Shown here piece by piece: positions 12,751 through 51,429 of a DNA stretch of 64,000 nt (position 1 is the first letter of the stretch; every line of letters begins with the position of its first letter). The position numbers and the translations under genes were made by a program. The notes beneath the pieces were generated by a model. The model made no database searches, was not told the origin of the DNA, and was given only the letters and a program-made list of their open reading frames with translations. Source of the stretch: Cyanophora paradoxa CCMP329 (lineage: Eukaryota; Plantae; Glaucophyta); contig QPMI01000053.1 of assembly GCA_004431415.1 (NCBI GenBank), positions 30,863-94,862 on the forward strand, written 5' to 3'.

Positions 12751-12776
12751 AACCTATTTGCAAGGAAGACTTTTTT

Positions 12777-16650: not shown

Positions 16651-17028
16651 CGCCGGACTTTCTCGAACCTTCACGAGGGCTGTACCCGGTGAGGAGTTTC
16701 ACCCCACTAAGTGCGAGTCCTAGCCATCTTAATCTTTGATTTCTATATATATATATAGAAGCGTCTGTCAGATCATGCACGAGCCCCTAATCTCCCCAGG
16801 GGTCCCCGTACCGAGGATCACTCGGCACATTCCCGCCACCATCATCGACCAACGCCAATGGCCGCCGCCGATTGCTCGAATCCGCTAGCGCTAGCAGGCT
16901 GCGGGCGCTCGAATTTGAGAGCGGAAGAGGAACTTCGGACTCCGAGAGGAAGCTTGAACTTGGAGGGCAGCGCCGGGGCGGCGAAGCTGGGGCGGCGCCG
17001 GGTCGCTGTAAGATAATTGATACACGAG

Positions 17029-21710: not shown

Positions 21711-24700
21711 ATGGAGATAAGCAGCGTAAACTCAGAGATAGGGCGAGCGGCGTTTTCATTTTTCGGCCCTGGCGAGATCGAGCGCATCAGCGTGAAGCAG
21801 CTGCGGAATCCAGTTCTATTTGATTCACTAGGGCGACCGTCGCCGGGGGGTCTCTACGATCCCGCGCTGGGGCCGATCGACAAGCACGCGAGGTCCGCGC
21901 GCCCGAGCACCAGCGCCCCAGTGCTATGAGCGCTTCCTCGGGGCAATGAGTACCGCGTACGCGCGCTGATCGAGCTTATGCGCAGTTGCTTGACGTGCGG
22001 TTTGAGCGCCACACAGTGCCCCGGGCACCTGGGCCATGTCCGCCTATCCGCCCCTGTATTCAACCCGCTCCTCATCACGATGCTCTTCAAGCTTCTGCGT
22101 TTGAAGTGCTTCTCTTGTCATCGCTTGCGCATGCATCGAGTTCGGGTCCGTTCCTGCTCGCGATTGGACGTCAGTCCCGGATCAAATCTGAGTTGCGCAA
22201 TGCAGGTTGAGCGTTACTGGGCGCGCCTGCTTCTTCTGGACATGGGTCGAGTTCTAGAAGCGCACGAAGTTGCTATGCCGCGCACCCACAGCCTCGATGA
22301 GAAGCCGCGGCAGAGGTCTAGCAAGAAGGACGAGGAGGCGCCGGCTGCTGAGGTCGCCGAGCCAGCAATCGAGGATCTGGAAGCCGCATCGCGCGAATTG
22401 CACGACCTTGTAGGTCTGCGTGCGGTGGGGTTGGCTGACGCGGCGATAGCTGAAACACACCCATGCAGACCGAATCCTGTCCGGAGGATACGATCGAAGT
22501 GGGCGCAAGCTTGCGCATGTCGCGGAAGCCTGGCGGGCTACGATGGCGGATTTCATGCAGCACGTACCTGCACGCAAGTGTGAAAATTGCGGGGCGTGCG
22601 TCCCTCCCCTTGCATGCATCCTTTGCACCTGTTGATCTCTCGTTCAGCATATCTCCAAGCCTTCGGAAGGAGGGAGTAAAATTCTTCCAGAATGCTTTGA
22701 CAGAGAAAGACCGAAGAGCGAATTCCTTGATCGGGCGTGATGCACCGTCAGTCTGGGGGTCTAGCAGCCTTTCAATGACTGCCCAGGAAATCACAGCAAT
22801 GGTAGGGATCACTCGCTTTCCCGAGAGCCTTCCTTCTTCGAATCTGAATGAACAAATGCAGCGCGTGTGTGCTACTGGAAGAGTGGATGCCGTTGTAGAA
22901 GAGGTCGGCAAGAATGTGACCGAAAAGAACACTAAGAAGAACAGCTCGGTTTCCTCTCGCTTCCTCAGCCCCTTCGAAGTCCATCGGCACATACAGCTCC
23001 TTTGGAACGAGGTGAGCGGATTGATTATACGTGCCACCGGAGTGTTCCTTTTCATATTCGGCCCAGGAACGGCTTGTTCTGGATGAGATGTTCGGGTCGC
23101 TGTCAGAGTCAGGTTCGGTCGATTGGCGAATCGCTATGTTTGTCGGCGTCTGTTCACGGTGCCAGTTCTTTGGCAGGACGGAGCTCTTCACCGGATATGT
23201 TTTTCATCCAGGTCATGGCGGTTCCTCCATCACGGTTTCGTCCACCAGCACGCATAGGCGATCTCACCTTCGAGCATCCGCAAAATGTGTCCTTCTCTAA
23301 GATCCTTCAGGTACTTTTTCTCTCCCTTGAAAGACTCTCATTTACTGACTCTCAGTACTCCTTTAGGCAGACTCGCATCTCTTGCAGACACTGGGGGTCC
23401 CTTCCTCGAAAGCAGCAGCCGCTTCAGAGCCCCCTTCCGTAGATATTGGATTCGTTCACGAGGCGTAAGCTTCTATCCCATTCCAAAATGAAAGCCTTTC
23501 CAACCCGACATCACAGATACGTCCAACTTCAGCTTGCGGTGAACAGTGTGATCGACTCGACCAAGGGGTCAGCCGCAGACAGCGGGGGCTTGAAGAAGAC
23601 CGACGATGCAAACGGTATAAGGCAGATTCTGGAAAAGAAGGAGGGGCTCTTCCGCAAGAACATGATGGTGGGCCATCACTGGGGGGTCAAATCTGTTCCT
23701 TGTTTCTGATTTTTGCGACAGGGCAAGCGTGTCAATTATGCAGCGAGATCAGTCATCTCTCCCGATCCCTACATTGCCACAAATGAGATTGGCCTGCCGC
23801 ACTATTTCGTGACACGATTGACATATCCGGAGGGAGTGACTCAGCACAATGTGGTCAGAGAGCACATATTTCTGCCCCGTGCTTATCGTTTCTGTTCAAT
23901 GACGCCGTTTATCCAGGAGCATTTGCGGCGATGTGTCATCAATGGCCCCCACAAGCACCCAGGGGCGAACTTCATAGAGTTCGAGGATGGGTACATATTG
24001 CATGCATTCCGGTTTTTTCTTCTGATGTAGCTGATGCTGCTCCAGACATCGAATCGATTTGAGCACACGGAACGAGACACAGAGGATGGGATTGGCGAAG
24101 CAGCTCCTAACCAAGAATCAAATGGATGGAACAGAGGTTAGAAGTCGCAACAAGAGGGTGTTTCGTCACGCGGACGATGGCGATATTCTCTTAGGTAACA
24201 CTTTTTAATTACTGCACAATGGCCTTTCGATTCTTAAAGCCTCTGCAGTCAACCGCCAGCCTACGTTGCACAAACCATCGATGATGGCACACCGACTTCG
24301 CGTGGTGCGGGGCTCAGGGCGCCATGATAAGACAATCCGCATGCATTACGCCAACTGCAACACCTATAACGCGGACTTCGATGGTGCCCACCCTGCCCCC
24401 TATCTTGGCAGAGCTGTTGCTAATGTTATTCTGCACAGGTGATGAGATCAACGTGCACTTGCCACAGTCAGAGCTTGCGAGGGCTGAGGCATACAACATT
24501 GCTGACACCGACCACCAGTACACCGTCCCCACTTCTGGCCGCCCAATCAGAGGGCTCATTCAAGACAATGTTGGCACGGGCGTCCTCCTCACATTGAAGG
24601 ACACGTTCCTCACAAAAGAATTGTTTATGCAGGTGCCACCTTTTGTAAAACCTTTCGGCATTCTCTTTTGGTCAATCTTTTTTGCAGTTGGTGTATGTCG

Positions 24701-27700
24701 CCGTTGGGGATGTTGAACAAGGTCGCATTGTGTTCCCCGAACCTGCTATCTTGAGGCCAAAGATGCTCTGGACGGGCAAGCAAGTTGTGTCGACGGTTCT
24801 GTGTCATCTGGCTGCAAGAATGAAACTTCCCCCCTTGAACCTCGAAGCTGGGACAAAAATCTCGGCTTCAGCCTGGAAGGGGTTTCCCGAAGAAGCAAGA
24901 GTTGTTATCCGGCAAGGCGAGCTGTGCACAGGTGTGCTGGACAAGAACGCGTTTGGAGCTTCAGAGCACGGTTTGGTGGGTCCTGCAGCCCCCAGTTTTG
25001 AAGGTCTCTCCATCCATGTGTCTTATCATTGCACAGGTGCACGCATGGTTCGAGGTGTACGGTTCTGCTGCAGCAGGGAAGCTCCTCACAATTCTCTGCA
25101 GACTCTTCATGCACTACCTCCAGGTCAGCTTCTATCCTCACTACTGCCTTTTTAATGTCTGAACGCGATGTTCCTCTTCAGTATGCGGGTTTCACATGTG
25201 GGATTGACGATCTCGTGATCAACTCTGCTGCTGGTGAGTGGGCTCCTCGATTCTTTAATTCAACTCTGCGAACTGTTTTCATTGCCGTAGATCGATCCCG
25301 TGTCAAGGCTCTTCGAGGCACAGCACGTGCAGGAATTCTGGCCGCAAACAGGCTCATGCAAACGCTAGAGGGTCCGAACCAGAGGTCGACTGCAGATGCA
25401 GAGATTTCAGTGGTGACTGAAGGGATGATTTCTGAAGTGCAGTCAAACCTTAAGCAGGTACAGAACCATCCCGCTTGCTTCCCTTCAGAATTTCTTACCT
25501 TTGGTTCTTCTTGGGCAGGCAATGAAACGAGTTGGGCTTGAGCAGTCTGCACCGCTTCTGGATTCCCTCATGAAGCAACAGATATCATCTATCACTTCGC
25601 AGGTGCTTGAAATAATCACCTCCAAGAAGCAGATTCAGATATCCATAACTTAGCTTGCCAGGTGATGCGGTCTTGCTTGGAGGCCGATGATGGTCCTCTG
25701 AAACGCTTCCCAAACAACAACATGACCCTGATGACCACGTCTGGAGCAAAGGGCTCCGTTGTCAACGCATCACAGATCTCATGTCTTCTTGGACAGCAAG
25801 AACTGGAAGGCCGGCGTGTGCCAATTATGCCTTCTGGCAAGACTCTTCCATGTTTCGATCCTTTCAGCCCGGAGCCAAGAGCTGGTGGGTTTATCGGAGA
25901 TCGTTTCTTGACTGGAATCCATCCTCAGGTGCTGCTTTCTTGCACTTTTTCGAAGTCTATCAAGATAACACCCTCCACATCATTTACAGGAGTACTACTT
26001 TCATTGCATGGCTGGACGGGAGGGGCTTGTCGATACTGCCGTCAAGACATCACGCTCAGGGTGCGTTGTACCAACAATGCTGCAGGCATTGGTTAACATG
26101 TTCCTTGCAGGTATCTCCAGAGGTGTGTCATTAAAAGCCTGGAGTCCCTTCAAGTGCAGTACGATGGAACTGTAAGCATATCTCGAGTGGCTGTTACGTG
26201 GAGCTCATTTGTGAGCAGGTTCGTGACGGAGATGGAACTGTCGTCCAGTTCGTATACGGGGAAGATGCCTTGGATGTCACCAAGGCGTCATTCGTGAACA
26301 AATTTTCATTTCTGCTTAACAACACCTCCGCAAAGGCAAGCACGTACATTGCAATTCAAAAGCACAGTCGTGTGGTAATCATAGCTGTGCAGCAACTCAA
26401 GCCATCGCCAAAGTCGAAAGGAGGTGCCCGAATTACCACAGAAAGTGATCTCGCATGGACAGAGGAGCAGGTGTGCTTCGAGATTTATCTCGGACATTTA
26501 TTCGTGTTGACGGTTCTCAGGTTGCACAAGACGATTTTGTTGAGAGCTGGGCGTCACAGCTCGGGCAGGATCTCTCAGCCTGCTCACCGAAATTCCACCA
26601 ACTGCTCTCCGATTATCTGGACAGCGATCCGGAAAGGTTGCTGGTGCGAGCCATGTTTTCTCCACACTGTCTTGGTTGCTCAGCTTTTTCTGGTAGCGGA
26701 AGAACGGTGGACGATTCAGCAGGAATTCTGCTCTCAGAGCAGTCTTGAGGCGTTATCAGCGAGCTCTAGCTGAACCGGGCGAAGTTGTTGGAGTCTTGGC
26801 TGCACAATCGATTGGTGAACCATCAACCCAGGCATGACCCCTCCCTCTCTTGGAAGACAGCACTGCGCACTGGATTTTGCAGATGAGAACGTTTATCGGC
26901 GCAGATGACTTTGAACACGTTCCATCAAGCTGGTGTGGGAGCAGCAAATGTGACCCTTGGTACTCGATTGCCTGCATCTTCCAAGCTTCAATCGCTTAAG
27001 CGCAAATGTGCAGGTATACCTCGCCTCCGAGAAATCATGATGACTGCAAGCGAAAACATTGGCACTCCTGCAATGACTTTACACCTCGTTCGGGGAGCTA
27101 AGGGGGCGGATGCTGAAGCACTCGCACGGTAACGACATCTCAGAACCAATTGTTGGCCTTTGACACCATACAATAACAGGAAACTGGGGCGTGTGCACCT
27201 GTCGGACGTCGTCGAGCAGGTCATCATCACTGAACAGGTTCACATATTTTTCGTGTTCATCTGCCGGCTTGCCTGATGCAGGTTGTAAGGTGGAGAGCGC
27301 AAAATCCGGGGAGAGGTCACGTTTGTATCGGATCAAGCTGCAGCTGGGGAATCCGGAAGCTAATGGGCTCTGGCTAGGTGTGTCATACAAACAGATTGTG
27401 ACATCTGTGAAGGTAAGCCCTCAATCTGGTGTATTTTGAGCGTCAACTTATTGTCATCATTGCAGGAAGCCTTCTTCCCGCGGCTCTGTGGCATGATAAA
27501 GCGGGAGTTGAAGGTTCAGGGGCGTGACGGGGGTGATTTTGGTGTTTCTGTGTCGTCCTCGCGATCGCGCCATCATGCTGCATCGAATCACGATGAGGTA
27601 CTCGGAGGCCAACACCGTCCAATTGCATTGAAGAATGGGCAGTTGACTGTGCTGTGCAGGCAGGAGAGTCTGCTGCGAATTCTGTTAAAAAGTACCAGGA

Positions 27701-29058
27701 TGATGACCGGGAAGAAGAAGACGATGATAACGGGATGTGGGCATCAAAAAACCGAGGTCCGAGGCTGCAATGATCGCAGCAGAAGCTCCTCTAATGCATG
27801 AACAGGACGTCGCAATGTCAGCTACGATGACCCAGATGAAAAGGAGCAGCGTATCCAAAAGTCAGCAATGCGGAAGGATGCATTGGATGGTTCCGATGAC
27901 GAGAATGACGAGCGCCCATTGGATCATGCAGTGAACGAAGTTGTTGAGGACACGGAAGAAGAACCTATCGCAGGAGATGCTGTTTCCGAGGGGGCACAGG
28001 TTGATTCCGATGAGGAAGTGCCCATGCGCAAGCAGAAGCCGTCGAGGAATAGCAAGGCTTCATCGGTCCGAGATGGTTCTTCCATGTTATTCGCTGCTTC
28101 ATTGACTCGCTTGTTGCAGGCTGATCGGGCATCCTCTTTGGAGACAGCGGCAACGAAGGGGCTCAAGAACCTGGCAGCCACCATGTGCTCTTCAGAGGAT
28201 GTCCCCCTTGTCCTCGATCCCAAATCTCACTGGATTGAAATTCGGTCGATCAAGGTGTGTGTGGCTCTTTCATCATAGATGGACTCCGTCATGCATCGTT
28301 TACCTGAGCCACTGTCGTTTCCAGGTTCCAGTTAAAGCGAAGCGATTGGCCATGGTGTCTCTCGCCGAGCATGCCTGCGGATTGACGCTGGTGCAAGAGA
28401 CAGAAGGCATCAAGAAGTGCCATGTGATTGCAAACCCTTCCAACAAGGACGAGGTTGCTGTTCAAACAGAGGGTGTCAACTTCGAAGTGCTTTGGGAGTA
28501 TGCCAAATTTGTCGATTGCGCTCGAGTGGACAGCAATGATATTGCCGCCATCTTGCATTTCTATGGTAAGAGTTTGGGATATCGGTCACCATTTTGCCCT
28601 CATTGAACCGATTCAGGTGTCGAAGCAGCACGAGCAGCTATCGTGAAGGAGATTCGTGGTGTCTTCCAGGTGTACGGAATTGTGGTGGACATGCGCCACT
28701 TGTCGCTCATTGCCGACTATATGGTCTGCTTTTTTTCCCTTCCCTGAATCGGTCACTCTTATCTATATGCAGACACTTGGTGGCGCCTTCACGCCTTTCA
28801 GTCGGATGGGGATGGCGCGGAATCCTTCACCGCTACTGAAGATGTCCTTCGAGACCACCACTCAATTCCTGATGGATGCCGCACTGTGAGTTTTTTGCAT
28901 AAAATCTGCCATTTCCAGACTGAGAATGGAGCTTTTGTTCCGCCAGAACTGGAGACTATGATGACTTGTCCACTCCTGCTTCCAGGATAGTCATCGGACG
29001 AGTTCCGCCAGGGGGCACTGGCAGCTTTGACCTGCTTTCCGCGAAGGTCAAGAATTAG
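21711..29058 (+). CDS. RPA1: RNA polymerase I largest subunit, many short introns
   Basis: [31 protein letters not shown]|[38 protein letters not shown]…[22 protein letters not shown]. Confidence 0.97.
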
Positions 29059-29104
29059 GACTGCGTGTGCTGTGGGTGGTGTGAATGCCATGGCTGTGCT
29101 TATC

Positions 29105-29195
29105 GCGTTTGGACACGTACTAAAAATGCAGGTCCGGGCTACAAGTGTGGGATGTACACTGCGGCCACTGTAGCCGCGGGCCCAGCCCACCGGGG
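29105..29195 (+). mobile_element. Repeat family B copy (partner inverted copy at 29730-29799)
   Basis: GCGTTTGGACACGTACTAAAA…ggctacaagtgtgggatgtacactgcggcc. Confidence 0.8.
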
Positions 29196-29799
29196 GGAAA
29201 CCATTGAACAGCTGGGCCGGCAACAGCGAGGGTCGCACCTCAGTCTGATTTGCATTAGCACATCCGTACAACAATGAAGTCGTAATGTCGACCATACCCT
29301 CATGATCACGTGCACTGAAAACCGCGAGGGCCGCACCTTCCGGATCCTATCTGTCGGTCCATATGTCCAGCCCAGATTGTCGTCGGTCGCGTCTGAAATG
29401 CGAATAGCCCAAGCATACTATGATACGTATACATGTACCAGATGGTATATATACGTAGCACGGATCTGCATACGTAGCCGCGGCGCATATTCATGTAGGC
29501 GATCGTTGTACCCCGAAGCGGCCAAAAGAAACTTGGAAGTGCCTGGGAGTGTATGTAAGCTGTGCAGCTACATTACGAGAACGATCCCACAGCCGAGAAG
29601 AGCGGTGAGTGCCGAGCCGAATAGTCCGAATAGTTCTTTAGCGTGTGCATTTTTGCGCGACACGGGATGTTTGCACGGCACGCCCTTATTTAGCTACGCG
29701 CTAGAGCTCAAGAGCCGAACCCTAAGCTCGCTGGTGGGCTGGGCCCGCGGCCGCGGCGGCGCAGTGCACATCCCACACTTTAAGTACGTGTCCAAATGC

Positions 29800-30077
29800 G
29801 AACCGCGCAAGCATACGCGGGAGCAGCTGCCAGTGGCACACAGCTTAGCAAAGCTGTTTGATGAGCTCCTAACGCGCAAGAAGGGCGCAAGCTTAAATGC
29901 ACGGGCGTGCAGGTTCAGCTCAAGAGCCGAAGATAGTCGAGTAAGAGCCTTCACGACTAAGAGCCCTCCGCGGTTATAGATCGCGCCCTTTTTATTTGCA
30001 GTCATCAAGCAGCTTTGCTAAGCTGTATGCCACTGCCAGCTGCTGCTTAACTAGCCGCGCGTATGCTTGCGCGGTTC
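29800..30077. mobile_element. MITE-like element with ~65-bp imperfect inverted repeats
   Basis: GAACCGCGCAAGCATACGCG…CAGCTTAGCAAAGCTG…TGATGA is the reverse complement of 30002-30077. Confidence 0.65.
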
Positions 30078-30744: not shown

Positions 30745-32338
30745 GCATTTGGACACGTACTAAAACGCAGGTCCGGGCTACAAGTGTGGGAATGTACACT
30801 GCGGCCGCCGCGGCCGCGGGCCCAGCCCACCAGGGAGCTGGCCGGCCAGGCCCTGCATGGCCTTCGAAGGGAGTAATGCCATGATGCGCCTCCCCACGGA
30901 CACTGTGGCTAGCTAGAGCTACAGGTGCCCGCATGCACGGCGTGGTGCTGCATCGCGTCTTGAGGCGGCGGGGGTCGTTCTCGGGGCGGTGGCGGGAGCC
31001 CCTACGGGCCCCGGGGGGGGCCCGACATGGAGTCAGCCTGCGGTCGGCGCCGGGGGGGGGGCGCGTCATGAGCCCTGATGAGAAGATTGATGCAGCTGAA
31101 AAGCGGTGTGCCTGCACGCCCCGCCACTAGCTATATAGCCTCCTTACAGTGCAGCTAGAAGCTTTACTGGCCCAGCCTGACTCAAAAGTTCGGACCTCCC
31201 GAGTCCAAGGCTTGGGCGTGTCTTATACATACTCTTCTTCTTCCCGAGTCCAAGGCCTTGGGGTCCTTCAAGGCTTCGCCTTTGTGCCTTGGGCCTTCGG
31301 GTCCTTCGCCTTTCGTCAAAACCGCACGGCCCGCTTGGGTGTCACACACACGGTGTGTCTTATACATACTCTTCTTCTTCTTCTTCCGAGTCCAAGGCTG
31401 GACTGAGGAGATCCGAGGTAGTGAGAGGAGCAGGCACTCACAGGCTAGGCCTAGGCTCTGGATCTCTGACCTAGGCTAGGCTCCGAGGCTCGCGGCCCTG
31501 AATCGAAATTGTAATCCGATCGATGATCCAATATTAATGATCATCAGATCGACTTTGCGAATCATTGAATGGCCCGGCCCAGCCGCAGGGCCCGGGCCCG
31601 GTACTGGTGGCACTGCGGCAGTGGAATCTGGAGCGCCAGGCCCTGGGGGTCACATGGGTCAACGCATATAATCCAACCGTTGAATTTCGGAACCTCAGAC
31701 CGTCGGACGTGCAATTGCACTTAATAATTTACTACTAAGTTAAGCTCAATTCCGCCAAACCTCGTCCAACCCTCTGTCCAACGAAGTCCGACTACACTAC
31801 TAGGCTAGTACTTTGAACTAACCCTGATCGCAACGAGGGCAACGAGGGGATGCAGGTGCGGGATCCGGAGCCCCACTTGACCCTGAATTCAAGAAGGACT
31901 GGCGAAGTCAAATTCGAAGCCAGCCTGAAGCCGAGACAACCCCCACCGCCACAAGACGCGATGCAGCACCACGCCGTGCGGGCACATGTAGCTATAGCTA
32001 GCTATATAGCTAGAGTGTTCATGTCCGACGGTCCGCAGGGAGGCGCGCGCATTACTTGATCTCCTTAGGGGGCCACGCAGGGCCCGGCCCGGAATCAGAC
32101 TCTGAGAGTTACTAAGTTAACGTTGCGATTACGACGTCCAACTTTCGACGCATCCTGATCCGCTACGGCACGGGCGTGGACGCGAAGCGCCTGCTCAGCT
32201 CGTAGCTAGCTAGGCTCCGATTCCCTTTTTTCCATCAGGGCACCAGTCCCTGCGGGTTACGCTCTCACCCAAACAGCACGGGTACAGTTAAAGCGCTGAG
32301 GTAGGAGGTCCGGCCGCGCCCGTAGCTTAGAAAGAGCA
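30745..32338 (+). mobile_element. Composite element: family B end … mosaic cargo … Fanzor omegaRNA end (copy 7, ~32083-32338)
   Basis: Starts GCA|TTTGGACACG and ends AGAAAGA|GCA. Contains FKBP fragments at ~31068-31147 and ~31850-31927. Confidence 0.7.
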
Positions 32339-32454: not shown

Positions 32455-35400
32455 CTACGCAGCAGCGATGGCGTTGTCCTCCAGCGCCTGGGCCTTGTCG
32501 AAAGCCTCGATCTCTGCTGCGTCCGCCTCCTCCTCTGCTCGCAGCCGGATCTCCCGCTTCTTCACCTCTGCGAGGCCGTGAGGCGGGGCCGGGGGTTTGG
32601 GTGGGTGGGCGGGTGGGTGGGTGGGGGGGGGGGGGGGGGGGGGGGAGGGGGGGGGGGGGGGGCGGCGGTGGAGGGGAGGGGAGGGCGTGGGCATGATCCA
32701 GCCCGCACCGATCTCGCGGTCGATCTTGGCGAGGGCATCCGGGTCGAAGCTCGGGCGGCGCCCCGCCTTGTCCACGCCGGCGAGCTTCTTGGCCATTTCG
32801 TAGCGGCTCAGCGCGCACTCGGCCCGCAGGCGGTGCATAGCCAGCTTCTCGGCCTGCAGGGCCTGCTCCGTCAGGATCCGCCGCCGCCGCTCCCGCGCCA
32901 TGATCTCTGCCACCCGCCGCATCTCATCTCCCACCGTCGACACCTGCGCCGCATCAGAACCGAACACGGTCGAGCGAGCGACGGGAGAGAGGGCGGACCT
33001 TGGCGTCGAGGCGACCGGAGAGGCGCCGCTCGCCCGCCAGCTCGACGGCCATCGCTCGCTTCTCCTCCGCCTCCTCCGCCGCCCGCTTCTCCAGCGCCCC
33101 GCAGTGCAGCCGCAGCGCCGCCAGCTCCGCCCGCAGCCGGGCCGCCTCCTTGTCCCCCGCCGCGGCCGCTGCCCGCAACTGCGCCTCCGCGTGCTTCGCC
33201 TCGTCGATCGTGCGCCGCGTCGCGCCGTGCGCGTCCCTCTCGACCCGCAGCGCCTCCTCCGCCCGCAGCCGCGCCGCCTCCTCGCCGCCCGCGTGCCGCT
33301 CCGCCGCCGCGCGCGCCGCGTCTGCCGCCTTGGCCGCCCCCTCCGCCGCCTCCCGCCGCTCCCGCTCGGCGTGCAGGGCGGCCTTGGCCGCCCGCAGCTC
33401 GTCCGCGAGCGCGTTCTTACCGCCCTGCGCCTGCAGCCGCGCCTCCTCCTCTCGCCGCCGCTTCTCCTCCGCCCGCACCGCGTCCTCGGAGCGGGCGCGA
33501 AGGGCCTCGGCGAGGGCGGCCTTCTCGGCGCGCTCGGCCTGCAGCGCGTAGGAGAGGCGGTAGGCCTCGAGACGGGCCTTGCCGAGGGCCTCCTCGGCCG
33601 CGTCCCGCTGCAGGTCGAGGCGCTCCCGCTGCGCCCGCTTCTTCTCCGCCTCACGCCGATCCGCCACCGCCGGCCGCGAGTAGTGCGACTCCAGCCGCAG
33701 CTCGATCCGGTCCATCACCGCACTCGACCGCGCGCTGCTCCCCAGTGACCTGCGGGGGCGTCAGGGGGAGCCGGAGAGCTCCTTCCGGAGGGAGGGCGCG
33801 CCAGGTCGAGGAGACGACCGAGGGGGCGCTCTGGCGGCGCTTCGGGATCGGACCGTCGATCGAGTGGCGCGCCGCTGCGGGCCCGTCGACTCCTGCCCCC
33901 TACAGGAAAACCAGGGACGCGCACGCGCGTCGAAGCGGAGGGCCTTGCGCCCCAGCTTGGGCGAGGAGGCGCGGGCGTGCTTGGGCGAGCCCGCCGGCTC
34001 GCTCGCCGCGTCCCCGCGCCGCTCCCCCGTCGCGAGCGCGTTCTCGGCTGCCCCCCGCCAGTCAGCCCCCGGCCGAAGAGCGCCGCAGAATGGGCGGCGC
34101 ACGGTCGTCGAAGCCGAAGCGGAGGGCCTTGCGGGCGGCCTTGGGCGACGAGGGGGCGGCGGCAACCTCCCCGCCGGTCCCGTGGCCGCCCAAGAGGACG
34201 GCGAGGGTCGGCAGGGGGGCCGAGGCGCCCTCCTGCGACTCGTCCGCCTTGGGCTCCCCGCGGGGGACGGCCGCCGAGGGCTCGGAGGCCTCGGCCGCCC
34301 CCACGAGGAGGGGCTCCTCTGCCTCGACGGCCAGCGTCGCCGCGGAGCCCTCCACGGTCAAAGTTGGGGAGGCCTCGGCCTCAACCCGCTCCGAGACCTG
34401 AGGGAAGACTCAGAGGCCGTCCGGGCTGCACAAGGAACAGCGGGGCACCTTGATGAAGAGGGCGGAGGGTGAGCAGAGGGGCGCGGCGGCCTCGGTCTCC
34501 TCCGAAACCTGAGGGAAAGAGTTACAAAGCGAGAAGCCTCCATACAGAGCCGATGAGCACCTTGGAGAAGAGGACAGAGGGGGAGCAGAGGGGCACGGCG
34601 GCCTTGGCCTCCTCCGAAACCTTCCGAAACGAATCAGAGGCTTGGCTGCATCCAAGGCAGAACCGAGGGTACCTTGGAGAAGAGGACGGAGGGGGGGCAG
34701 AGCTCGAGGGGTCCCTCGCGAGCGACTCCGGCCTTAGCCTCGGCTCCGGCCTGCAGAAAAGCGTCAGATACCGCCGGACGCGCGGAAAGAACAGAGGCGT
34801 ACCTTGGAGAAGAGGACGGAGGGGGAGCAGAGGAGACCCCTGGAGTCCTGGTCTTGCCCGTCCTCGGGCTCGGGCTCGTCTTCTGCAGAGGGCTCGGTGC
34901 CGCCCGCAGAGAAAGCGTAATGAAGGCCGGAGCGGACCCTCGAGGTCATCGGCGCCGGCGTCGAGGACGAAGCTGACGGTGCGAACCGAGGCTAGAGTCC
35001 CCGCCCGCAGCAGCTGCGCGCAGGCCTCCTTGCGCATCCCCTCCCCCTCCTCCTCGTCGTCGAGGCTGGCAAAGGAGACGGCGGGTGCCAGCGCGGGGCC
35101 CGCAGATTCCGGGGCCGCGAGGAGCTCCGAGGCCGACAGGGGCGACGGCTCGGGCAGCTCGAAGGTTCCGAAGAGGTGGTCGAGGCCCGGTTCGATCGTG
35201 GGCTCCCCGAGCGACTCGGCTGCCTCGCTCGGCTCGGCCTCGGGCCGCTCGGCGGCGGGGGCCTTCACGTCGTTCGCTGGACTGGAAGTCTCCGAGGCCG
35301 CTGCGATCCCTTGGGCGATCTTCGGCTCCCGACCGAGATCCTCCTCATTGTTCGAATTATCCAACTCCCCGAGGGCGCCGAAGAAGGTCTCGCCGAGCTC

Positions 35401-35666: not shown

Positions 35667-36432
35667 GCCTCGGCGGTCGGCGCACCTTGAAGTTCAGGGC
35701 GCAACCGGGTGCTCCGCGCATGAGTCAAAGGCGCGGCGTGCCTGGCGATAGAGACGGGCGACAATAGCGCTACCAGTGAGCACTCAGAGGGAGGCTTGGG
35801 CGGGTGCCGAGCAGATCTAGTGCCGCGGATCGAAGCTGCAGCTGATGGTCGAGCTGCCGAGAGCGTACAGACTGCGCGGGAGCCGCTGCAGCGGCGGGCT
35901 GGACTCTGCGAATCTGCGGGCTTAGCTGTGCAAGTGCGAGGACAGTGCGTGTGAGGGCGACGCGAGCTGCGGGCTTAGCTGTGTGAATCTGCGAGTGGGG
36001 TGGCGGCTGCTGGCAGAGGGTGGAGGGCGCCGTCGACAGCGCAGGGCATGCCACGTGCAATGAGGGGCTGAAGAGGCCAGGGTGTCACATTTCTAAAGGG
36101 ACTGAAGGACTGAAGGGGCTGAGCTGGAGCTGAGCTGGGAGGGGGGGGGGGGGGGAGGGGGGGGTGGAGAGGAGAGGGGGGGGGGCGTGCAACTTTCGGG
36201 TGCAGTGACAAGCGTAAGTCTGTGTACCCCACAGGTAAGGTCCGACGCACAAGGTCCGCAGGTTTCTTCTTTCTCGCCTCCCCCAGCCCGGGATCTGTGA
36301 GTGCTGCCTTCCCCGTGAACTCTGAACACCTTATCGTCCAATTCCGAAGCTCCAGTCCCGTTTCCAGTGTCACCCAGTCACTTGAATTTGTCGCGCCTCG
36401 AAGCTCCCGTGACTCGGAATTCCTCAGAAGCC

Positions 36433-37063
<631 letters not shown>

Positions 37064-37935
37064 AGCCTCGCCCAACAGAGCGCTTGCGTGGATGCGCGAA
37101 ACTGTGTACAGCTTAGATATTAGGAACCGCATGTCGGAACGTGTGCCGTGGAAAGAAAGTCGAATGTGCTCATGCATCCATTGCTACCTCGGGGCCTAAT
37201 CGTAATCATAATCAAAAGACGCCCAACCCCTCGTGGCCTAACTTGAAGTAATCGTAATCGTAATCAAAGACGCAATCAAAGACGTCAAAGATCGTAATCG
37301 TTATCAAAGATCTAGATGTCCAAACCCTCAGGGCCTGCTGTTAGTACTCGTAATCATCATCAAAGACACCCAACTTAGCAACCGGAGCCTCATGCCCACT
37401 AGGTAGCAAGGGGGCCACATGCCATGATGTACATGTAAACAGGTGCAGCCCGGAGCCTTCGAATTCGATGCATATGCATGCGCAGGGCTCGTCCGCAGCA
37501 GCCGGACAGCTCGCGCTCTGGTGGGCTGGGCGGCCACTGGGCCAGGCCTGCAGCTGGGCCCACTGGGCCACGGCCATAGCCCCAATTGCCCCTGTTCATG
37601 AAGGCTGAAGGATTGGCTTTAATCCATTGCTACCCCGCATTTATATATATATATACAAGTGTGGGATGTACACTGCGGCCGCCGGGCTGGCCGCGCCATG
37701 GCTATCATAGTAGTATAGCTAGCGCTGGACTACGGGACTCTGCCGCAGTGCCTTCGTCAGTGAGTTCGACAAACGAGACAGGCAGACTCTTGAGCTCAAC
37801 TTAGCAAAACGCTCGTCGACAGACGGCCTCGGCCCCTCCGTTTCAGTCCGATTTCACGGTATCGGCTTTGGAATTCATCCCCGATGGGGAAAAATGCTTG
37901 ACGCTGCTAAGAAAAAAGGATTCCAGCAGGGCCTA

Positions 37936-38440
37936 TAACTATAACGTTTGTAACTATCATAGTATAACTATAACTATAACGAGGATAGCAAGTGCGGCAA
38001 CAAGCTGCCCCAAGGGCCTCTCTCAGGCCCCACACTTCCTAGACTCATGTGGTCGGTCTCTCCATCACTTGCTGCGTGGGTAGCACTCCTGGCTCTCGCG
38101 AAAGAAGGTCCTGTTGCCCCCGCGGCCGAGGATTCTAATTTCGTCCAACTTTCGTCCAGTTGCGATTACGATCCCCCAACTAGGCCTGGGGCCGGCTCGC
38201 CCTCCCAGCGCCGCCCGATCGCGATCGTAATCGTACTCTCTCAGGAGCATCTTCATCCGCTACGGCACGGGCGTGGACGCGAAGCGCCTGCTCGGCTCGT
38301 AGCTAGCTAGGCTCCGATCCCCTTTTTCCCCATCAGGGCACCAGTCCCTGCGGGTTACGCTCTCACTCACCCAAACAGCACGGGTACAGTTAAAGCGCTG
38401 TAGGTAGGAGGTCCGGCGCGCCCGTCGCTTAGAAAGAGCA
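37936..38440 (+). mobile_element. Mosaic insertion ending in Fanzor omegaRNA (copy 8)
   Basis: Direct repeat AGCAGGGCCTA at 37925-37935 and 38437-38447. Includes a ~100-bp copy of ~46994-47094. Confidence 0.9.
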
Positions 38441-38840
38441 GGGCCTAATCGTAATCGTAATCAGACATCCAACCCCTAATCCTAATCGTAATCAAAGATC
38501 CCCAACCCCTCAGGGCCTGTTAGTAATCGTAATCGTAATCAATTGCAAAGACGTCCCGCAGCCGATCCTGGCATGGTAAACAGGAGCCCGGGTGCGGCCC
38601 TGGCAGCCAGAATTTGAAGTTTTGCTTTAGCCGCCAGCCCAGGTCGCGGACGGAAATATTAATGCTTGAAGACACAGCACGATGCATATTATATATAAAG
38701 CTAAAGCGAACGCAACTATCTACAAGTCTGAGAGAATACGGCGAATATACCATGAATTCTAGCATAACAATCCGGCCTGCTAACCTTCAGGATGCGAGAT
38801 GAGATATAGAGGATGCAAGATCGGCAGCCTGTGTTTCAAG

Positions 38841-41283
38841 TCAAAACCCTGGCCTTCGCATAGCCGTGGAACAAAAAACCCGGACCTGCTGCCGCGCCCA
38901 GTCGTGGCCAGCAGCAGATTGCCCAAGAATTTCGTTAAGAATATCCGTCTGGCAGGCAATCAGCTCTGTGATCCATGAAAACAAGCGAGCAGTTACAGAC
39001 CGATGATAGGTCATCGTTTCCGAGGCTGTATGGTTGCTCTTCAAGAGCAGTCGGAAGGGAGATCTGCATGTCCGAGATTGCATTGGCATCATTACTAGCA
39101 GACTCGCCTTCGAAGTCTTCCGCAATCTGCAGAACGCCGATCATCGCAAACGAAACTTCTCCAGCGAAACAACACGACGAACCTCCTCGAGAGATGGCGT
39201 TGATAAAGTGATGTCCGGGAGAGCAAGCTGGGGGGACGAGAAGGACGACGACAGTTTTGCGCCCGATATAAGCATATGCGGAACGTTGAAGCGGTCAATT
39301 GCCTGAGAAAGCGGTAGTTCAGCATCAACTCACAGTGTGAAGCAAGAAACTCTCATACGTCTCCCAGAATTGTGGCCATACTCGAAAGAAAGCTAACTTC
39401 ATTCTGTGTGAACATGCGCCGCTGGCTCGAATGCAACCCCAAGACACCATAAGGACGGGGTTGGCATTTCGATCCAATCACCACAGATACGCCACTGAAG
39501 ACCCCATGTCCCTGCCGGAAGGTTGGCTGACGCTTGTGACATTGACGAAGATTATAGTACATGCCTGGTGCAAGGTGGGCCAGTTGAACCTGTTTTCTGT
39601 GTGGAAGTTCTCCACAATCACGGGTGTCCCTGCATCCAATATCACCAATGTGCTTGAAATTCGGCATTCAAGGAGAGAGTACCTGTAGCTAAACAGTAGC
39701 CCGACTGTGATTGGGTCGATGTACCCACGAGAGCCGAGCCCACTAGGCCATCACGCCAGCCGACACCAGCACGAAGAAGGAGCGCCTCACCACCCTTCAA
39801 GCAACCAAAGTTAAACTCGGTCGTCACCAAAGAAAAAGAAAGCGTGCAGAACGCACCTGAAGCAGTTCCAGAATCTTAACATATTCCGTTCCCATCTGAG
39901 CAAAGTATCTCAATGCTATGCAAACCAAGATTCCAGCAGGGCCGGCACCGCTCGGTGGACGATTACACACATGTCCTCCATGATCTACGAAAGAGATGCT
40001 CGTTAGAGAAAAGGAACACGGAAAGAGGTTCGATCGGAAATATTGTGTACTCGGACCTTCATCAAGTCTGAAAGTGTGTAGGCACGTTTCGAGAAAGTTT
40101 CAAGTGCATGCTGTTCACTCTGGAATCAGAACGACGGCTCGAAGAAACCAAGTTTCGAAGCGCACCTGGAAAATCTTCAGCACGCTGGATTCTTTCGCAT
40201 CGGAGGATGGGTGCGTCTGGATCGCCATAGAGCTCGACGAGGGTGGAGGCGAGGGCGTTGAGAAGGATGTCAAAGGGTCGGGGAAAGCGCTTGACGGCTC
40301 GGGAAGCCCGGCAAGCAGTGGGCTGACATGGAAAACGGAAGGGGATGCGTCGTGATCTGCAGGCGACTCCAAAGCTGCATGAGGGGGAGAGGCTTTTGAA
40401 GATCCGGGGGCTAGCTGGGGCGTCGAGTTTGCGGCGGGGGTTTGTGCGTTGAGACTGCATTCAGGAGACGCCGATTCCGGGCTGCCTTCTTCCAGCGGAC
40501 TAAGCATCCCGGTCCCAGTGCCAAGCCCAGACCCGACTCCCTCGCCGCCTGCGTTCATCTGAAGGAGGTTGGCTGCGACGAGGTTCGCGTTCAGTGAGTT
40601 TGGAGCGAGTTGCCCAGCGGTGGTGACAAGAAGCGCTGCGCCGGGAAGTGTCAAACAGATACCAGTGAACACCAACGCCCTTAGCGCACCGCGTATGTAC
40701 TGCTTTAGCTGCGCGTTCTCATGAGCGAGACGCTTGTTTTCCTCCTCTAGTATTCGTTGCACGTCGATCAGCTTCTGGTTCTCGTTCTTTAGCTGATTAC
40801 ACCTCTCTTCTGTTTTCTTCTTCTTCACGCGAACGCGGCAGTTCTGTGGCGGCGCGGCGAATCTTAACAGGAACAGAATAGGCTTAATTTCATCGTTTCG
40901 GACGACTGCGGACCTGAAACCAAACCTCGATTTGCCGAGGCGGCATCTTCAGCTTTTGACTGCACGGCGCAGGACGGTCAGCTTCAGCACTGTACTGGAG
41001 TGCGGAGTCTCGGACCTCAGAAACTGCTTCGTGGCGGCATCCAGCCGGTCGTTCTGCGCGAAGGCCTCAGACAGAGGAGGCCCGTGGATCTGCGGCCCCG
41101 ATCCGCCCGGCACACCTGCTTGAAGTACGCCTGCAGGACTTCGAGCTGCTCTTGTGTCAACCTCGTCTTGCGAGGCTTCTTCTCCGCCCCGCGATCGCTG
41201 TCCGCATCGGATTGATCCTCCGCGTATTGCTGAGACCGCCCCGGCGCCGCGTCGGGCTCAGTCTTCAGAGTAGCTGGAGGCAT
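38841..41283 (-). CDS. Homeodomain-leucine zipper transcription factor with a C-terminal GAF domain
   Basis: Spliced KKPRKTRLTQEQLEVLQAYFKQ/NDRLDAATKQFLS/QKLKMPPRQIEVWFQ/NCRVRVKKKKTEERCNQLKNENQKL…. GAF: LLLRAGVGWRDGLVG…SQSGYCLA…PVIVENFHTENRF…HGVFSGVSVVI…PYGVLGLH…FTQNEVSFL. The 3' end is approximate. Confidence 0.85.
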
Positions 41284-43675: not shown

Positions 43676-43939
43676 CTTTTCAAATTCGAGCACCCGCAGC
43701 TGGTGAATTCGAGCACCCGCAGCTGTCGAATTCGAGCACCCACAGCGACCGCGGTCAGGCGTCGCCGTCGGTTTCGAGCCGCCGTTCCGCGTTCGGCTGG
43801 GCTTTTCTGACAGCCGTGACGTCGCCGCGCGCGGAGTTTTACTGGGGATAGCCCCCTGATCGTAATCGTAATTTTCCAGTTGACCAGGCCAGGGCTCCCC
43901 CCGCCTATAGCCCATCGTAATCGTAATGGGCGCGGCAGT

Positions 43940-44137
43940 CGCAATCGTAATCGTACTGATCGCACTTTCGTCCAACTTTCGTCCAACTTCGTCCAACTTT
44001 CGTCCAACTTTCGTCCAACTTTCGTACAACTTTCGTCCAACTTTCGTCCAACTTTAATTTCGTCCAACTTTCGTCCAACTTTCGTCCAACTTTCGTCCAA
44101 CTTCGTCCAACTTTCGTCCAACTTTCGTCCAACTTTC
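43940..44137. repeat. Fanzor-intron fragment joined to (AACTTTCGTCC)n satellite
   Basis: CGCAATCGTAATCGTACTGATCGCA is identical to the Fanzor intron and is followed by ~15 11-mer units. Confidence 0.88.
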
Positions 44138-44661
44138 GAATTCGACCAGCCTCCATTCTGCTGATGGGCACGTGCGCACGCCGGGGAGGATAACTGGTTC
44201 TTCCAGAGAGCCCACCGGAGAGCCCGCCACGTGCGCGTGCAGCCGCGTGCCGCGTGCCTGGGGCAGCCGCGTGCCGCGTGCCTGGGGCAGAACTGTCAAA
44301 AAACGCCTACCCCCTAATCGTTATCGCAATCAAAGACACCCGGCAGGATATATGCTATTTGTCTAGAGGTGGAGCAGTATTGCATCGCGTCCGGACAGTC
44401 AGAAGATGTGATGCTGGAACTGTGGCCATATCGCGATCGCGATCCGTTTCTTGCTGTCGTTTCCAACTTGACAAATCAGTTTTTATTTGAATCAAGGCTT
44501 GATCCGATGATCATAAAGCCCCCAGCAGTCAGCGGCTAGCCTAGTCTAGTTCTGGGCCGCAGATCTGGAGCTAGCGCTCCAGATCTAGATCTAGAGCAGG
44601 GATCGCGCCCCGCGGCGATCGGGCCCAAATCCCGTAGTCCGAATCATTGAATCCGGATTCG

Positions 44662-45370: not shown

Positions 45371-45403
<33 letters not shown>

Positions 45404-46505: not shown

Positions 46506-47318
46506 ATGATCGGCCCTTTTCTGCAAGCCAGTCCAGCGAGCCAGCGAACCGGCGAGCCAGCGAGTCTGTCCTTACTCGACATGAACAGAGCAGTCGCGCG
46601 CCTACCCTGGAGTCGGCAGTGCTAGGCGTAGAGCTGCGGGCCGAGCCGTTGGGTTCGAGTCTTTTGAGAGTACCTCGCCCAGCGCTTTACCTCGGTGGCG
46701 CTGGCCTTCTTCCCTTCTTCGCGACCGCCCTGGCGACGTATCCAAGTGTCGAAATACAAAACGTTGAGCTCGCCGCCGTGCGATTTTGAATTTCTGCACA
46801 TAAGTTGGTCTATTCTTCGCTTACGCTACTTTCAGACTGTTCAGATTTACTACGCTTGCTCGATTGTCTCTTTCTTGGGCGCTGTGCAGTGGGGTCTGGG
46901 CATCGCCAATTTTCACACCAAAGACGCAACACCACAAGCAGAGGCACAGGCTGGTAAAAGATCCGTTGCAATCATTCGGTTTCTTTACCTACACTCTCTC
47001 AGGCCCCACACTTCCTAGACTCATGTGGTCGGTCTCTCCATCACTTGCTGCGTGGGTAGCACTCTTGGCTCTCGCGAAAGAAGGTCCTGTTGCCGCACTT
47101 GCTATCCTCATCCCAACATTTGCTGTTGCTCTCATGTATGACGTTCGATCTGTTCGCGCTGGCCTAGTAAGTGAGATATTGCTCTCTTTGAGTTTCCTTT
47201 CTTGAGCTGATAATTGATGATCTGCGTCCAGGCCCCAGCTTGGTACAGCTCGCTGCGCCTGCCTCTTTCGTTTGGAGCCATCATGTGTATGATGGCGTCA
47301 TTGCTGAGGTTGCTGTGA
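46506..47318 (+). CDS. DUF3429 / TMEM69-like membrane protein
   Basis: QIYYACSIVSFLGAVQWGLG…WSVSPSLAAW…YD…APAWYSSLRLPLS. The 5' exon structure is uncertain. Confidence 0.8.
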
Positions 47319-51136: not shown

Positions 51137-51429
51137 CCTAACACCCCTATACGTATACCCCCTCGCCCCTGGCTGAGGTTGCTCAGAACTCGAGTCCTGG
51201 GAGTGTCTTTTACTTGCTCTCTCTCTCTCTCTCTCTCTCTCAGAACTTGCTCTGAACTTGCCCCGTCGGACTTGAGCTTCTTCTTCGATTGGACCCCGCG
51301 GCCGAGGATTCTAATTTCGATTGCGACGTCTTTGATTACGATTACGTCTTTGATTTTTAATTTTATTTCGTCTCTTCGTTTCGAACATCGCTACGCTAAG
51401 CAAGCTACTCTTCCAATTACAAAGTTTGT

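What the first reader, a model, noticed from the sequence alone, without database searches (positions are those of the whole stretch)
37925..38447. TSD-bounded patchwork insert: stitched host fragments terminated by an omegaRNA
Seen between the two AGCAGGGCCTA repeats, in order: a (TAACTA)n-like tract; ~100 bp (~38018-38118) copying the TMEM69-like gene 9 kb away, including intron sequence (~46994-47094); a 25-bp piece also at ~51295 (CCCGCGGCCGAGGATTCTAATTTCG); 11-mer satellite; then the Fanzor intron/exon/omegaRNA. Inference: one insertion event with several template switches, such as RT template jumping from the omegaRNA onto other nascent RNAs, or Pol-theta-like templated repair.
Basis: partly seen in the sequence, partly recalled or inferred. 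Interest (0 to 1): 0.82.

Follow-up and report, generated by a model that had tools for sequence, protein, structure and literature searches.

The report
Fanzor tail insertion with stitched filler
A broken-off tail of a high-copy Fanzor jumping gene landed near a chromosome end, and its ragged front was patched with short DNA pieces copied from a gene 9 kb away. This is a clear example of an insertion signature already described for Fanzor elements of another alga.

Summary
An 11-base direct repeat (37925-35, 38437-47) brackets a ~500-bp mosaic.

**What the mosaic holds, in order**
- A self-repeating AT-rich tract.
- 22 bases that are the reverse complement of 47088-47109.
- 15 unassigned bases.
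- 101 bases equal to 46994-47094 (100/101 identical): 9 intron bases plus 92 exon bases of a DUF3429/TMEM69-like gene.
- A 26-mer also found at 51294.
- A 35-base satellite piece.
- The last 261 bases of a Fanzor family: part of the last intron, the last exon, and a 138-base tail.

**Is it a misassembly?** No. In three DNA data sets (2012, 2019, 2024), contigs at single-copy depth bridge each junction, so the mosaic is also unique in the genome.

**How it probably arose.** The right repeat copy contains the element's own last four bases (AGCA). Five of the nine family ends in the window have such GCA-anchored repeats of 10-12 bases, against 1 of 1045 control blocks. I read this as a one-ended, 3'-end-first insertion. 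Its 5' side was healed by DNA-templated repair that switched template several times.

**The reverse-transcription idea is disfavoured.** Both strands of the donor were copied, introns are retained, and there is no tail or carried-over guide sequence.

**Novelty.** The signature (5' truncation, variable target duplication, extra 5' sequence) was published for Chlamydomonas Fanzor elements in 2013. This scan had already noted truncated Fanzor tails with target duplications elsewhere in this genome.

The parts
37925..37935 (+). Left copy of the 11-base direct repeat (target duplication): GCA-type anchor plus 7 target bases
   Evidence: Exact pair with 38437-47, the only two exact matches in the window. 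Same GCA-anchored pattern in 5 of 9 family copies.
37936..37980 (+). Tract A: AT-rich (TAACTA)-like filler with a 14-base direct repeat (37933-46 = 37968-81) that starts in the last 3 bases of the left repeat copy
   Evidence: No external donor found in the window.
37981..38002 (+). Piece B: 22/22 reverse complement of 47088-47109 (exon 3 of the DUF3429 gene)
   Evidence: zero matches expected by chance.
38003..38017 (+). Piece C: 15 bases with no donor in the window
   Evidence: The best other match is 14/17 at 47696, which is not significant.
38018..38118 (+). Piece D: copy of 46994-47094 (100/101): last 9 bases of intron 2 plus 92 bases of exon 3 of the DUF3429/TMEM69-like gene, same strand
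   Evidence: Intron boundary from the RNA contig and exon-wise Pfam hits.
38118..38143 (+). Piece E: 26-mer identical to 51294-51319. It overlaps D by 1 base and F by 5-8 bases.
   Evidence: context.
38136..38173 (+). Piece F: 11-mer satellite units plus a junction to the GATTAC-type satellite. Identical to 12405-39 and 12549-83 (reverse strand, 35/35) and to 44055-77 (23/23).
38174..38179 (+). Six unassigned bases between the satellite piece and the family homology
   Evidence: Alignment A1.
38180..38244 (+). 3' part of the last Fanzor intron, with a 14-base deletion relative to other copies
   Evidence: Alignment A1. The intron is defined in copy 19889 by continuity of the RuvC-III motif across it.
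38245..38302 (+). Last Fanzor exon (19 codons including the stop at 38300-02)
   Evidence: The TnpB/Cas12f-type zinc-ribbon domain PF07282 lies in the upstream exon of the longer copy.
38303..38440 (+). Conserved 138-base tail after the stop codon (candidate omegaRNA scaffold or transposon right end), ending ...AGAGCA at 38440
   Evidence: Nine copies share it and their flanks differ from the next base on. Summed contig depth is two orders of magnitude above unique flanks.
38437..38447 (+). Right copy of the 11-base direct repeat: last 4 bases of the element plus the first 7 bases of the satellite flank
46994..47109 (+). Donor interval in the DUF3429/TMEM69-like gene (intron 2 end and exon 3). 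Both strands were copied; the two copied tracts overlap by 7 bases (47088-94).

Best explanation
This is one insertion of a 5'-truncated copy of a high-copy Fanzor-bearing element into the edge of a subtelomeric satellite.

**Shown**
- The element's fixed 3' end (...AGAGCA) is joined precisely to the target right after a GCA.
- The target bases that follow are duplicated on the other side.
- The interior is a mosaic whose identifiable pieces come from 5.6 to 26 kb away on the same chromosome arm.

**Inferred mechanism**
1. The insertion is replicative and 3'-end-first ("one-ended").
2. The top strand of the target is opened after GCA, and the element's 3' end is joined there.
3. Copying of the element aborts 261 bases in, inside its last intron.
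4. Host repair synthesis finishes the job by hopping between DNA templates: satellite, then a 26-mer, then 101 bases of one strand of a DUF3429 gene, then 22 bases of its other strand, then locally slipped AT-rich sequence.
5. The product is sealed to the left target end, which had been filled in by 7 bases. That fill-in gives the duplication.

The enzyme that makes the precise 3' join is not identified. A rolling-circle (HUH) transposase is the best guess by analogy.
For: - **Precise shared 3' end.** All nine copies end at the same base and have unrelated flanks.
- **GCA-anchored repeats.** Repeats of 10-12 bases occur within 1 kb upstream in 5 of 9 copies, against 1 of 1045 control blocks.
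- **Variable 5' truncation.** Family homology from the 3' end is 124, about 190-240, 261, 284, 310 and more than 566 bases in different copies.
- **Real and unique junctions.** Zero-mismatch contigs at single-copy depth bridge 37655-38047, 38059-38168, 38139-38217 and 38412-38900 in runs from 2012, 2019 and 2024.
- **Recent, gene-derived filler.** The pieces are near-identical to their donors (100/101, 22/22, 26/26, 35/35).
- **A double-stranded DNA template.** Both strands of one 116-bp donor interval were used.
- **Introns retained**.
- **Junction overlaps** of 1, 1 and 5-8 bases.
- **Slippage repeats.** They occur in tract A here and in the filler of copy 46013, which has a 24-base tandem duplication.
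- **Published precedent.** Fanzor elements CRe-1, CRe-2 and CRe-3 of Chlamydomonas are 5'-truncated with intact 3' ends. They have 7-19 bp duplications anchored after a fixed target motif, and sometimes extra non-Fanzor sequence after the 5' duplication (PMC3627910).
- **Related published signatures.** Replitron-1 shows variable duplications that include its target motif (PMC10288648). Helitron filler-DNA capture shows 2-13 bp junction overlaps (PMC6544945).
Against: - No transposase, left end or full-length element was found in the window.
- The nuclease part is nearest to a mimivirus Fanzor2 (E = 3.7e-4). Published Fanzor2 carriers are IS607-like, without target duplications.
- The 3' end shows no hairpin more stable than shuffled sequence.
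- The target is a satellite in which GGGCCT recurs, so the repeat is less improbable than for random sequence.
- Another copy (14692) abuts the same satellite type in about the same register, which this model does not explain.
- Donors for tract A, piece C and the 6-base spacer are unknown. Better donors for E and F may exist outside the window.
- A single event is the parsimonious reading, not a proven one.
Confidence: 0.58

Rival explanations
1. Retroposition. A reverse transcriptase primed at the target copies an omegaRNA-containing transcript from its 3' end, then jumps onto other nascent RNAs.
For: 5' truncation, a target duplication and 3-6 bases of 3' microhomology with the target resemble LINE-type target-primed reverse transcription. 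Piece D is sense to its gene and carries 9 intron bases, as a nascent pre-mRNA would. RNA contigs over the family tail are abundant.
Against: - Piece B comes from the antisense strand of the same exon.
- The Fanzor intron is retained in all copies.
- The copy ends exactly at GCA without a tail.
- It carries no parental guide or flank, although RNA contigs read through the end into flanks.
- Non-genic satellite is included.
- Copy lengths do not match one processed RNA.
Confidence: 0.07
2. A pre-formed mosaic. The patchwork already lay upstream of a parental right end elsewhere and was copied as one block, because copying runs from the right end into whatever lies upstream.
For: Copies 10022 and 32338 share the same composite of satellite unit plus 190-base tail, each with a different 5' extension. 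So composites do get re-copied. Copies 12032 and 32338 share a 79-base piece about 1.2-1.3 kb upstream of their ends.
Against: All internal junction contigs are at single-copy depth in three data sets, so no parent with these junctions exists in the sequenced genome. The inverted, overlapping B/D arrangement cannot be a contiguous stretch of the intact donor locus.
Confidence: 0.12
3. Stepwise patchwork. Several separate break-repair events in a repair-prone subtelomere built the mosaic, and the 11-base repeat is partly a coincidence of the local GGGCCT-containing satellite.
For: The region is repeat-rich and lies about 20 kb from a (TTAGGG)n telomere. The 14 bases after the right end also occur at 37192. 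The family part differs by at least 8% from every other copy in the window, while the filler is about 99% identical to its donors.
Against: An exact 11-mer that includes the element's own AGCA, placed exactly at the right end, matches the pattern at four other copies in non-satellite targets. The gene-derived pieces have no means of inserting on their own.
Confidence: 0.13
4. Nuclease-seeded spread. A Fanzor/guide-RNA cut at a site resembling a parental right flank made the break. One-ended copying from the parent installed the tail, and GCA is the end of the target-adjacent motif.
For: - Two copies (38440 and 14692), and at least one more contig, abut the same satellite type at a similar register.
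- The duplication of copy 16132 is 18 bases long with 2 mismatches.
- Craig 2023 speculated that Fanzor cutting lies behind non-canonical duplications.
Against: The nine right flanks in the window are otherwise unrelated from the first base. The duplications are 6-9 bases beyond GCA, closer to the motif than TnpB/Fanzor cut sites lie (my own knowledge of those enzymes). No guide, motif or activity was tested.
Confidence: 0.1

Closest known systems
CRe-1, CRe-2, CRe-3: Fanzor1-bearing non-autonomous Helitron2 elements of Chlamydomonas reinhardtii, 'one-ended transposition' (Bao & Jurka 2013, PMC3627910)
   Same: Frequent 5' truncation with intact 3' ends. Variable short target duplications at truncated copies, anchored right after a fixed target motif. 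Occasional extra non-Fanzor sequence just after the 5' duplication. An intron-containing Fanzor gene.
   Different: - The anchor here is GCA, identical to the element's own last bases, not a T-rich tetranucleotide.
- The nuclease looks nearer to Fanzor2.
- No Helitron ends or hairpins were shown.
- The host is a glaucophyte, according to earlier notes of this scan.
- The filler is a multi-piece mosaic that uses both strands of a nearby gene, which that paper does not describe.
Replitron-1 insertion signature (Craig 2023, PMC10288648)
   Same: Copy-and-paste insertion that is orientation-specific after a short target motif. The motif matches the end of the element's terminal repeat, and the variable-length duplications include it.
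   Different: Replitrons carry parental downstream sequence as 'fuzzy' right ends; here the right end is exact. Replitrons were not detected in glaucophytes. No Rep gene was seen here.
Helitron gene capture by filler DNA during break repair (e.g. PMC6544945; plant filler DNA, Gorbunova & Levy 1997, as cited there)
   Same: Host fragments from several loci are stitched inside or next to a rolling-circle element, with short junction overlaps. Introns are kept.
   Different: Here the filler sits at the 5' junction of a single truncated insertion bounded by a duplication. It is not internal to an amplified element, and it is unique in the genome.
Replication-based template switching (FoSTeS/MMBIR) and polymerase-theta templated insertions (own knowledge)
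   Same: Several short templated tracts in both orientations from nearby DNA in cis. Junction microhomology of 0-8 bases. Local direct repeats next to the junction.
   Different: Those processes are not tied to a transposon end. A 101-base tract from 9 kb away is long and distant for polymerase theta. No enzyme was tested.

Membership tests
One-ended, 5'-truncated Fanzor-element insertions (CRe-1, CRe-2, CRe-3 type) | Intact, shared 3' end with variable 5' truncation | tested here: met
   Nine copies end at the same base. Family homology from that end is 124 to more than 566 bases.
One-ended, 5'-truncated Fanzor-element insertions (CRe-1, CRe-2, CRe-3 type) | Variable short target duplication anchored after a fixed target motif | tested here: met
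   GCA plus 6-9 bases in 5 of 9 copies, against 1 of 1045 control blocks. The motif differs from the published TTTT.
One-ended, 5'-truncated Fanzor-element insertions (CRe-1, CRe-2, CRe-3 type) | Element encodes a TnpB/Fanzor nuclease | tested here: met
   PF07282 zinc-ribbon domain (E = 2.4e-7) in the longer copy. RuvC-III-like motif is continuous across the last intron. Weak match to mimivirus L79 Fanzor2.
Helitron2 non-autonomous element | 3' subterminal hairpin and asymmetric terminal inverted repeats; ends shared with a RepHel-encoding Helitron | tested here: inconclusive
   The last 81 bases fold no better than shuffles (z = -0.16). The 5' end is unknown and there is no RepHel in the window. 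Helitrons exist in this genome only according to earlier notes.
IS607-like Fanzor2 element | Serine recombinase partner; no target duplications | tested here: not met
   Duplications are present and no recombinase gene is in the window. Published Fanzor2 elements lack duplications.
LINE/SINE-type retroposition | RNA intermediate: 3' tail, spliced or transcript-strand template | tested here: not met
   No tail. Introns are retained. One piece comes from the antisense strand.
Polymerase-theta templated insertion | Short patches (tens of bases) templated close to the break, with microhomology | tested here: inconclusive
   Tract A fits: a local 14-base repeat. Piece D does not: 101 bases from 9 kb away. 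Junction overlaps are 1-8 bases.
Fanzor omegaRNA | Structured RNA overlapping the gene's 3' end, ending at the element boundary and followed by a guide; bound by the nuclease | tested here: inconclusive
   The position fits, and RNA contigs cover it and read into the flanks. But there was no Rfam match, no covariation, and contigs cannot give RNA ends.

The most novel reading that the evidence does not exclude
Fanzor right ends in this alga spread on their own through a target-primed, 3'-end-first copying process. It would be seeded either by a GCA-specific strand transfer or by the Fanzor nuclease itself cutting guide-like sites, such as the satellite unit hit at the same register by copies 38440 and 14692. 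The unfinished 5' ends are closed by multi-template repair. That would make the family a generator of gene-fragment mosaics and of new guide-bearing ends, independent of a classical transposase.
Probability: 0.12. Interest if true: 0.75.

Novelty: new member of a known kind. Interest (0 to 1): 0.38.

Why it matters
How 5'-truncated, duplication-flanked Fanzor copies arise has been open since 2013. This locus is young and its pieces can be traced base by base.

- It indicates that the variable 5' junction was made by DNA-templated repair with template switching, not by reverse transcription.
- It shows that the precise 3' join happens right after a GCA that matches the element's own end.
- It shows in miniature how such insertions shuffle host gene fragments.

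It is a single locus and the class is already described, so its value is as a mechanistic example, not as a new kind of system.

Tried and rejected
- **Misassembly: rejected.** Zero-mismatch, single-copy contigs from three independent DNA runs cover every junction.
- **High-copy repeats that inserted separately: rejected for pieces B and D.** The 71-nt contig that D shares with its donor is at about twice unique depth, and the contig carrying B is at single-copy depth.
- **Empty-site allele: not found.** The only joints were to other repeat copies.
- **Copy 46013 as parent: rejected.** It lies 1 kb from the donor, but it holds only 124 family bases and differs at diagnostic positions near the end.
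- **L1-style twin priming for the B/D inversion: rejected.** The inverted piece lies downstream, not upstream, of the direct piece in the donor.
- **Donors for tract A and piece C: none found.** Only 11-12-mers at chance level and a 14/17 match turned up.
- **Rfam:** no match.
- **Structure of the tail:** no covariation, and folding is no better than shuffles.
- **Transposase in the window:** Pfam scans of the large reading frames found only host genes, an Rpb1-like gene and cytochrome c1.
- **Literature on Fanzor in Cyanophora:** none found.
- **Organism name:** I did not verify it. Cyanophora paradoxa comes from earlier notes of this scan.
- **Failed or wasted calls:** one look-up of earlier findings failed; two searches were input slips that I corrected.

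Full report
**Setting**

The window is a chromosome end. A (TTAGGG)n array runs from 58717 to the last base, and the finding lies about 20 kb inside it. Earlier notes of this scan name the organism as the glaucophyte alga Cyanophora paradoxa; I did not verify this. The stretch is intergenic and repeat-rich. It lies between satellite blocks built of GTAATC-type units (37192-37374 and 38441-38545) and about 230 bases past the 3' end of an expressed minus-strand gene (RNA contig ending at 38671).

**The family**

A repeat ending ...TAGAAAGAGCA occurs nine times in the window:
- Seven copies are on the minus strand, with ends at 4908, 10022, 12032, 14692, 16132, 19889 and 46013.
- Two copies are on the plus strand, with ends at 32338 and 38440.

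All nine share the last base and diverge from the next one on. Measured from that end, family homology is 124 bases (46013), about 190-240 (32338, 10022), 261 (38440), 284 (12032), 310 (16132) and more than 566 (14692, 19889).

The longest copy encodes a Cas12f/TnpB-type zinc-ribbon domain (PF07282, E = 2.4e-7). Its nearest solved relative is the mimivirus Fanzor2 L79 (E = 3.7e-4). A RuvC-III-like motif (ADHDGGAAR | GILIRY) is continuous only if a 160-base GT..AG intron is removed. The shared tail therefore consists of the end of the last intron, a 19-codon last exon and 138 non-coding bases. In DNA runs the summed contig depth over this tail is two orders of magnitude above the unique flanks. 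The tool warns that this figure is not a copy number.

**Anatomy of the insert**

| Coordinates | Part | What it is |
|---|---|---|
| 37925-35 | Left repeat copy | Left copy of the 11-base direct repeat |
| 37936-80 | Tract A | AT-rich; a 14-base direct repeat (37933-46 = 37968-81) starts inside the repeat copy |
| 37981-38002 | Piece B | 22/22 reverse complement of 47088-47109 |
| 38003-17 | Piece C | 15 bases without a donor |
| 38018-38118 | Piece D | 100/101 to 46994-47094, same strand |
| 38118-43 | Piece E | 26/26 to 51294-51319 |
| 38136-73 | Piece F | 11-mer satellite units and a junction to the GATTAC-type satellite; 35/35 to two places near 12.4-12.6 kb (reverse strand) and 23/23 to 44055-77 |
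| 38174-79 | Spacer | Six unassigned bases |
| 38180-38440 | Family tail | Carries a 14-base deletion in the intron part |
| 38437-47 | Right repeat copy | Right copy of the 11-base direct repeat |

Junction overlaps are 1 base (A/B), 1 base (D/E) and 5-8 bases (E/F).

**The donor gene**

The donor at 46.6-47.3 kb is a four-exon DUF3429 (TMEM69-like) gene. Its exons hit successive parts of the Pfam profile. An RNA contig of 1156 bases aligns to the insert only from 38026 to 38118, with the one donor-specific mismatch. It is therefore the spliced donor mRNA, and it places the intron 2/exon 3 boundary at 47002/47003. Piece D thus holds 9 intron bases and 92 exon bases. Piece B comes from the same exon but from the opposite strand, and its donor tract overlaps the end of D's by 7 bases.

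**Is it real?**

Logan contigs were available from three DNA runs of different years and studies. Each gives the following zero-mismatch contigs at the depth of the unique flanks:
- a 393-base contig over 37655-38047, covering the left flank, the repeat copy, A, B, C and the start of D;
- a 110-base contig over 38059-38168, covering the D/E/F junctions;
- a 71- to 80-base contig starting at 38139, covering the F/family junction;
- a contig starting at 38412 that runs from the family end into the right flank.

The 71-base contig over 38018-88 has about twice that depth, as expected for a sequence shared with the donor. So the mosaic is not a misassembly, its junctions are unique in the genome, and pieces B and D are not high-copy repeats. 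No contig joins 37935 directly to 38448. All runs may come from the same strain.

**Is the bracket a target duplication?**

The right copy is made of the element's own last four bases plus seven flank bases. I searched the 1 kb upstream of each of the nine ends for a match anchored on the end/flank junction. Five copies have one, and every one starts with at least GCA:

| Copy (end) | Repeat length | Distance upstream |
|---|---|---|
| 38440 | 11 bases | 512 |
| 46013 | 12 bases | 206 |
| 16132 | 10 bases | 516 |
| 12032 | 11 bases | 727 |
| 10022 | 12 bases | 317 |

The same search in 1045 control blocks elsewhere in the window gave one hit. The four other targets are unrelated sequences, so the pattern does not depend on the satellite context of this copy.

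Removing the insert and one repeat copy yields a site that reads like an ordinary first unit of the adjoining satellite. I accept the bracket as a target duplication, with one caveat: GGGCCT recurs in that satellite.

**Mechanism**

The fixed end is the 3' end, and the target always carries GCA just before the duplicated bases. This fits the following sequence of events:
1. The target top strand is opened after GCA.
2. The element's 3' end is joined to the downstream target DNA.
3. The upstream target 3' end is filled in over a 6-9 base stagger, which creates the duplication.

The other side has no defined end. It carries slippage repeats (tract A here; a 24-base tandem duplication in copy 46013) and foreign pieces. 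The pieces here are young (at most 1% diverged). They come from the same chromosome arm within 5.6-26 kb and are in both orientations. They use both strands of one 116-bp interval. That is what template switching on double-stranded DNA during repair or replication produces. I cannot say which polymerase or pathway did it.

**Against reverse transcription**
- One piece would need an antisense RNA.
- The Fanzor intron and the donor intron end are retained.
- There is no tail.
- No parental flank is carried along, although RNA contigs do read through the end into flanks.
- Copy lengths do not fit a single processed RNA.

**Against a pre-formed, copied mosaic**
- The junctions are single-copy.
- The B/D arrangement cannot be contiguous genomic sequence.

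Re-copying of composites does occur in this family, however. Copies 10022 and 32338 share the same breakpoint and the same satellite unit in front of a 190-base tail.

**Comparison with the literature**

- *Bao and Jurka 2013 (PMC3627910)* described exactly this class for the Fanzor1-bearing Helitron2 elements CRe-1, CRe-2 and CRe-3 of Chlamydomonas. Copies are 5'-truncated with intact 3' ends. Duplications of about 7-19 bp flank the truncated copies and lie right after the family's target motif. In some loci, short extra non-Fanzor sequence follows the 5' duplication. They called it one-ended transposition and left the mechanism open.
- *Craig 2023 (PMC10288648)* found variable duplications that include the target motif for Replitron-1, and speculated that Fanzor cutting might underlie such signatures.
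- *Helitron filler-DNA capture* with 2-13 bp junction overlaps has also been described (PMC6544945).

This case differs in four ways:
- the anchor is GCA, identical to the element's own end;
- the nuclease is apparently of Fanzor2 type, and published Fanzor2 carriers show no duplications;
- the host lineage is different;
- the filler is resolved in detail.

I found no paper that mentions Fanzor together with Cyanophora. This scan had already noted truncated Fanzor tails with target duplications elsewhere in this genome.

**Open points**

- The carrier transposon and its enzyme are unknown. The window holds no transposase, and the end shows no significant hairpin.
- The omegaRNA label is untested.
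- Copy 14692 abuts the same satellite type at about the same register as copy 38440, and a further contig does so too. This could reflect target preference, guide-directed cutting or shared ancestry.
- The duplication of copy 16132 is really 18 bases with two mismatches, and it lies inside a 258-base copy of 13980-14253. The simple model does not explain this.

**Verdict**

The reading of one event with template switches is supported in its DNA-repair form and disfavoured in its reverse-transcriptase form. It is a clear new example of a known insertion signature, of moderate interest.

Noticed in passing
window 58717-64000: About 5.3 kb of (TTAGGG)n with degenerate variants runs to the end of the window, so the window is a chromosome end. 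Telomere-like CCTAAT units also occur right after the insert (38444-38510).
   Followed up: partly
window 16132-16705 and 13980-14253: Copy 16132 has an 18-base repeat with 2 adjacent mismatches. Its left copy lies inside a 258-base duplicate (96-99%) of 13980-14253, and that homology runs on both sides of the repeat. A simple insertion with a target duplication does not explain this.
   Followed up: partly
window 10022-10338 and 32099-32338: Two copies share the same 5' breakpoint inside the last exon and the same satellite unit in front of it, but have different outer 5' ends. So composite ends are themselves re-copied.
   Followed up: partly
window 14629-14691 and 38441-38500: The right flanks of copies 14692 and 38440 are the same satellite type in about the same register. 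The other seven flanks are unrelated. This could be target preference, guide-directed cutting or common ancestry.
   Followed up: partly
window 43939-44138: A fragment resembling the Fanzor last intron is followed directly by 16.6 units of the 11-mer satellite. That satellite also precedes copies 12032 and 10022/32338 and forms piece F. The satellite and the family recur together at different breakpoints.
   Followed up: no
window 37641-37687; also 29105, 30745, 43497, 47385: A separate ~87-base repeat family containing ACAAGTGTGGGATGTACACTGCGGCC. Its summed contig depth is about 30 times that of the unique flanks.
   Followed up: no
window 12031-13365 and 31068-32338: Copies 12032 and 32338 share a 79-base piece about 1.2-1.3 kb upstream of their ends in the same relative orientation. 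This may be upstream flank carried along during copying.
   Followed up: no
window 32599-32685, 36137-36185, 45372-45402, 55576-55648: Long homopolymer G or C tracts (31-87 bases) lie in very GC-rich stretches.
   Followed up: no
window 18683-19603 and 21978-29979: Host genes beside the Fanzor copies: a cytochrome c1 reading frame (E = 5e-78) and a multi-exon RNA polymerase Rpb1-like gene.
   Followed up: partly
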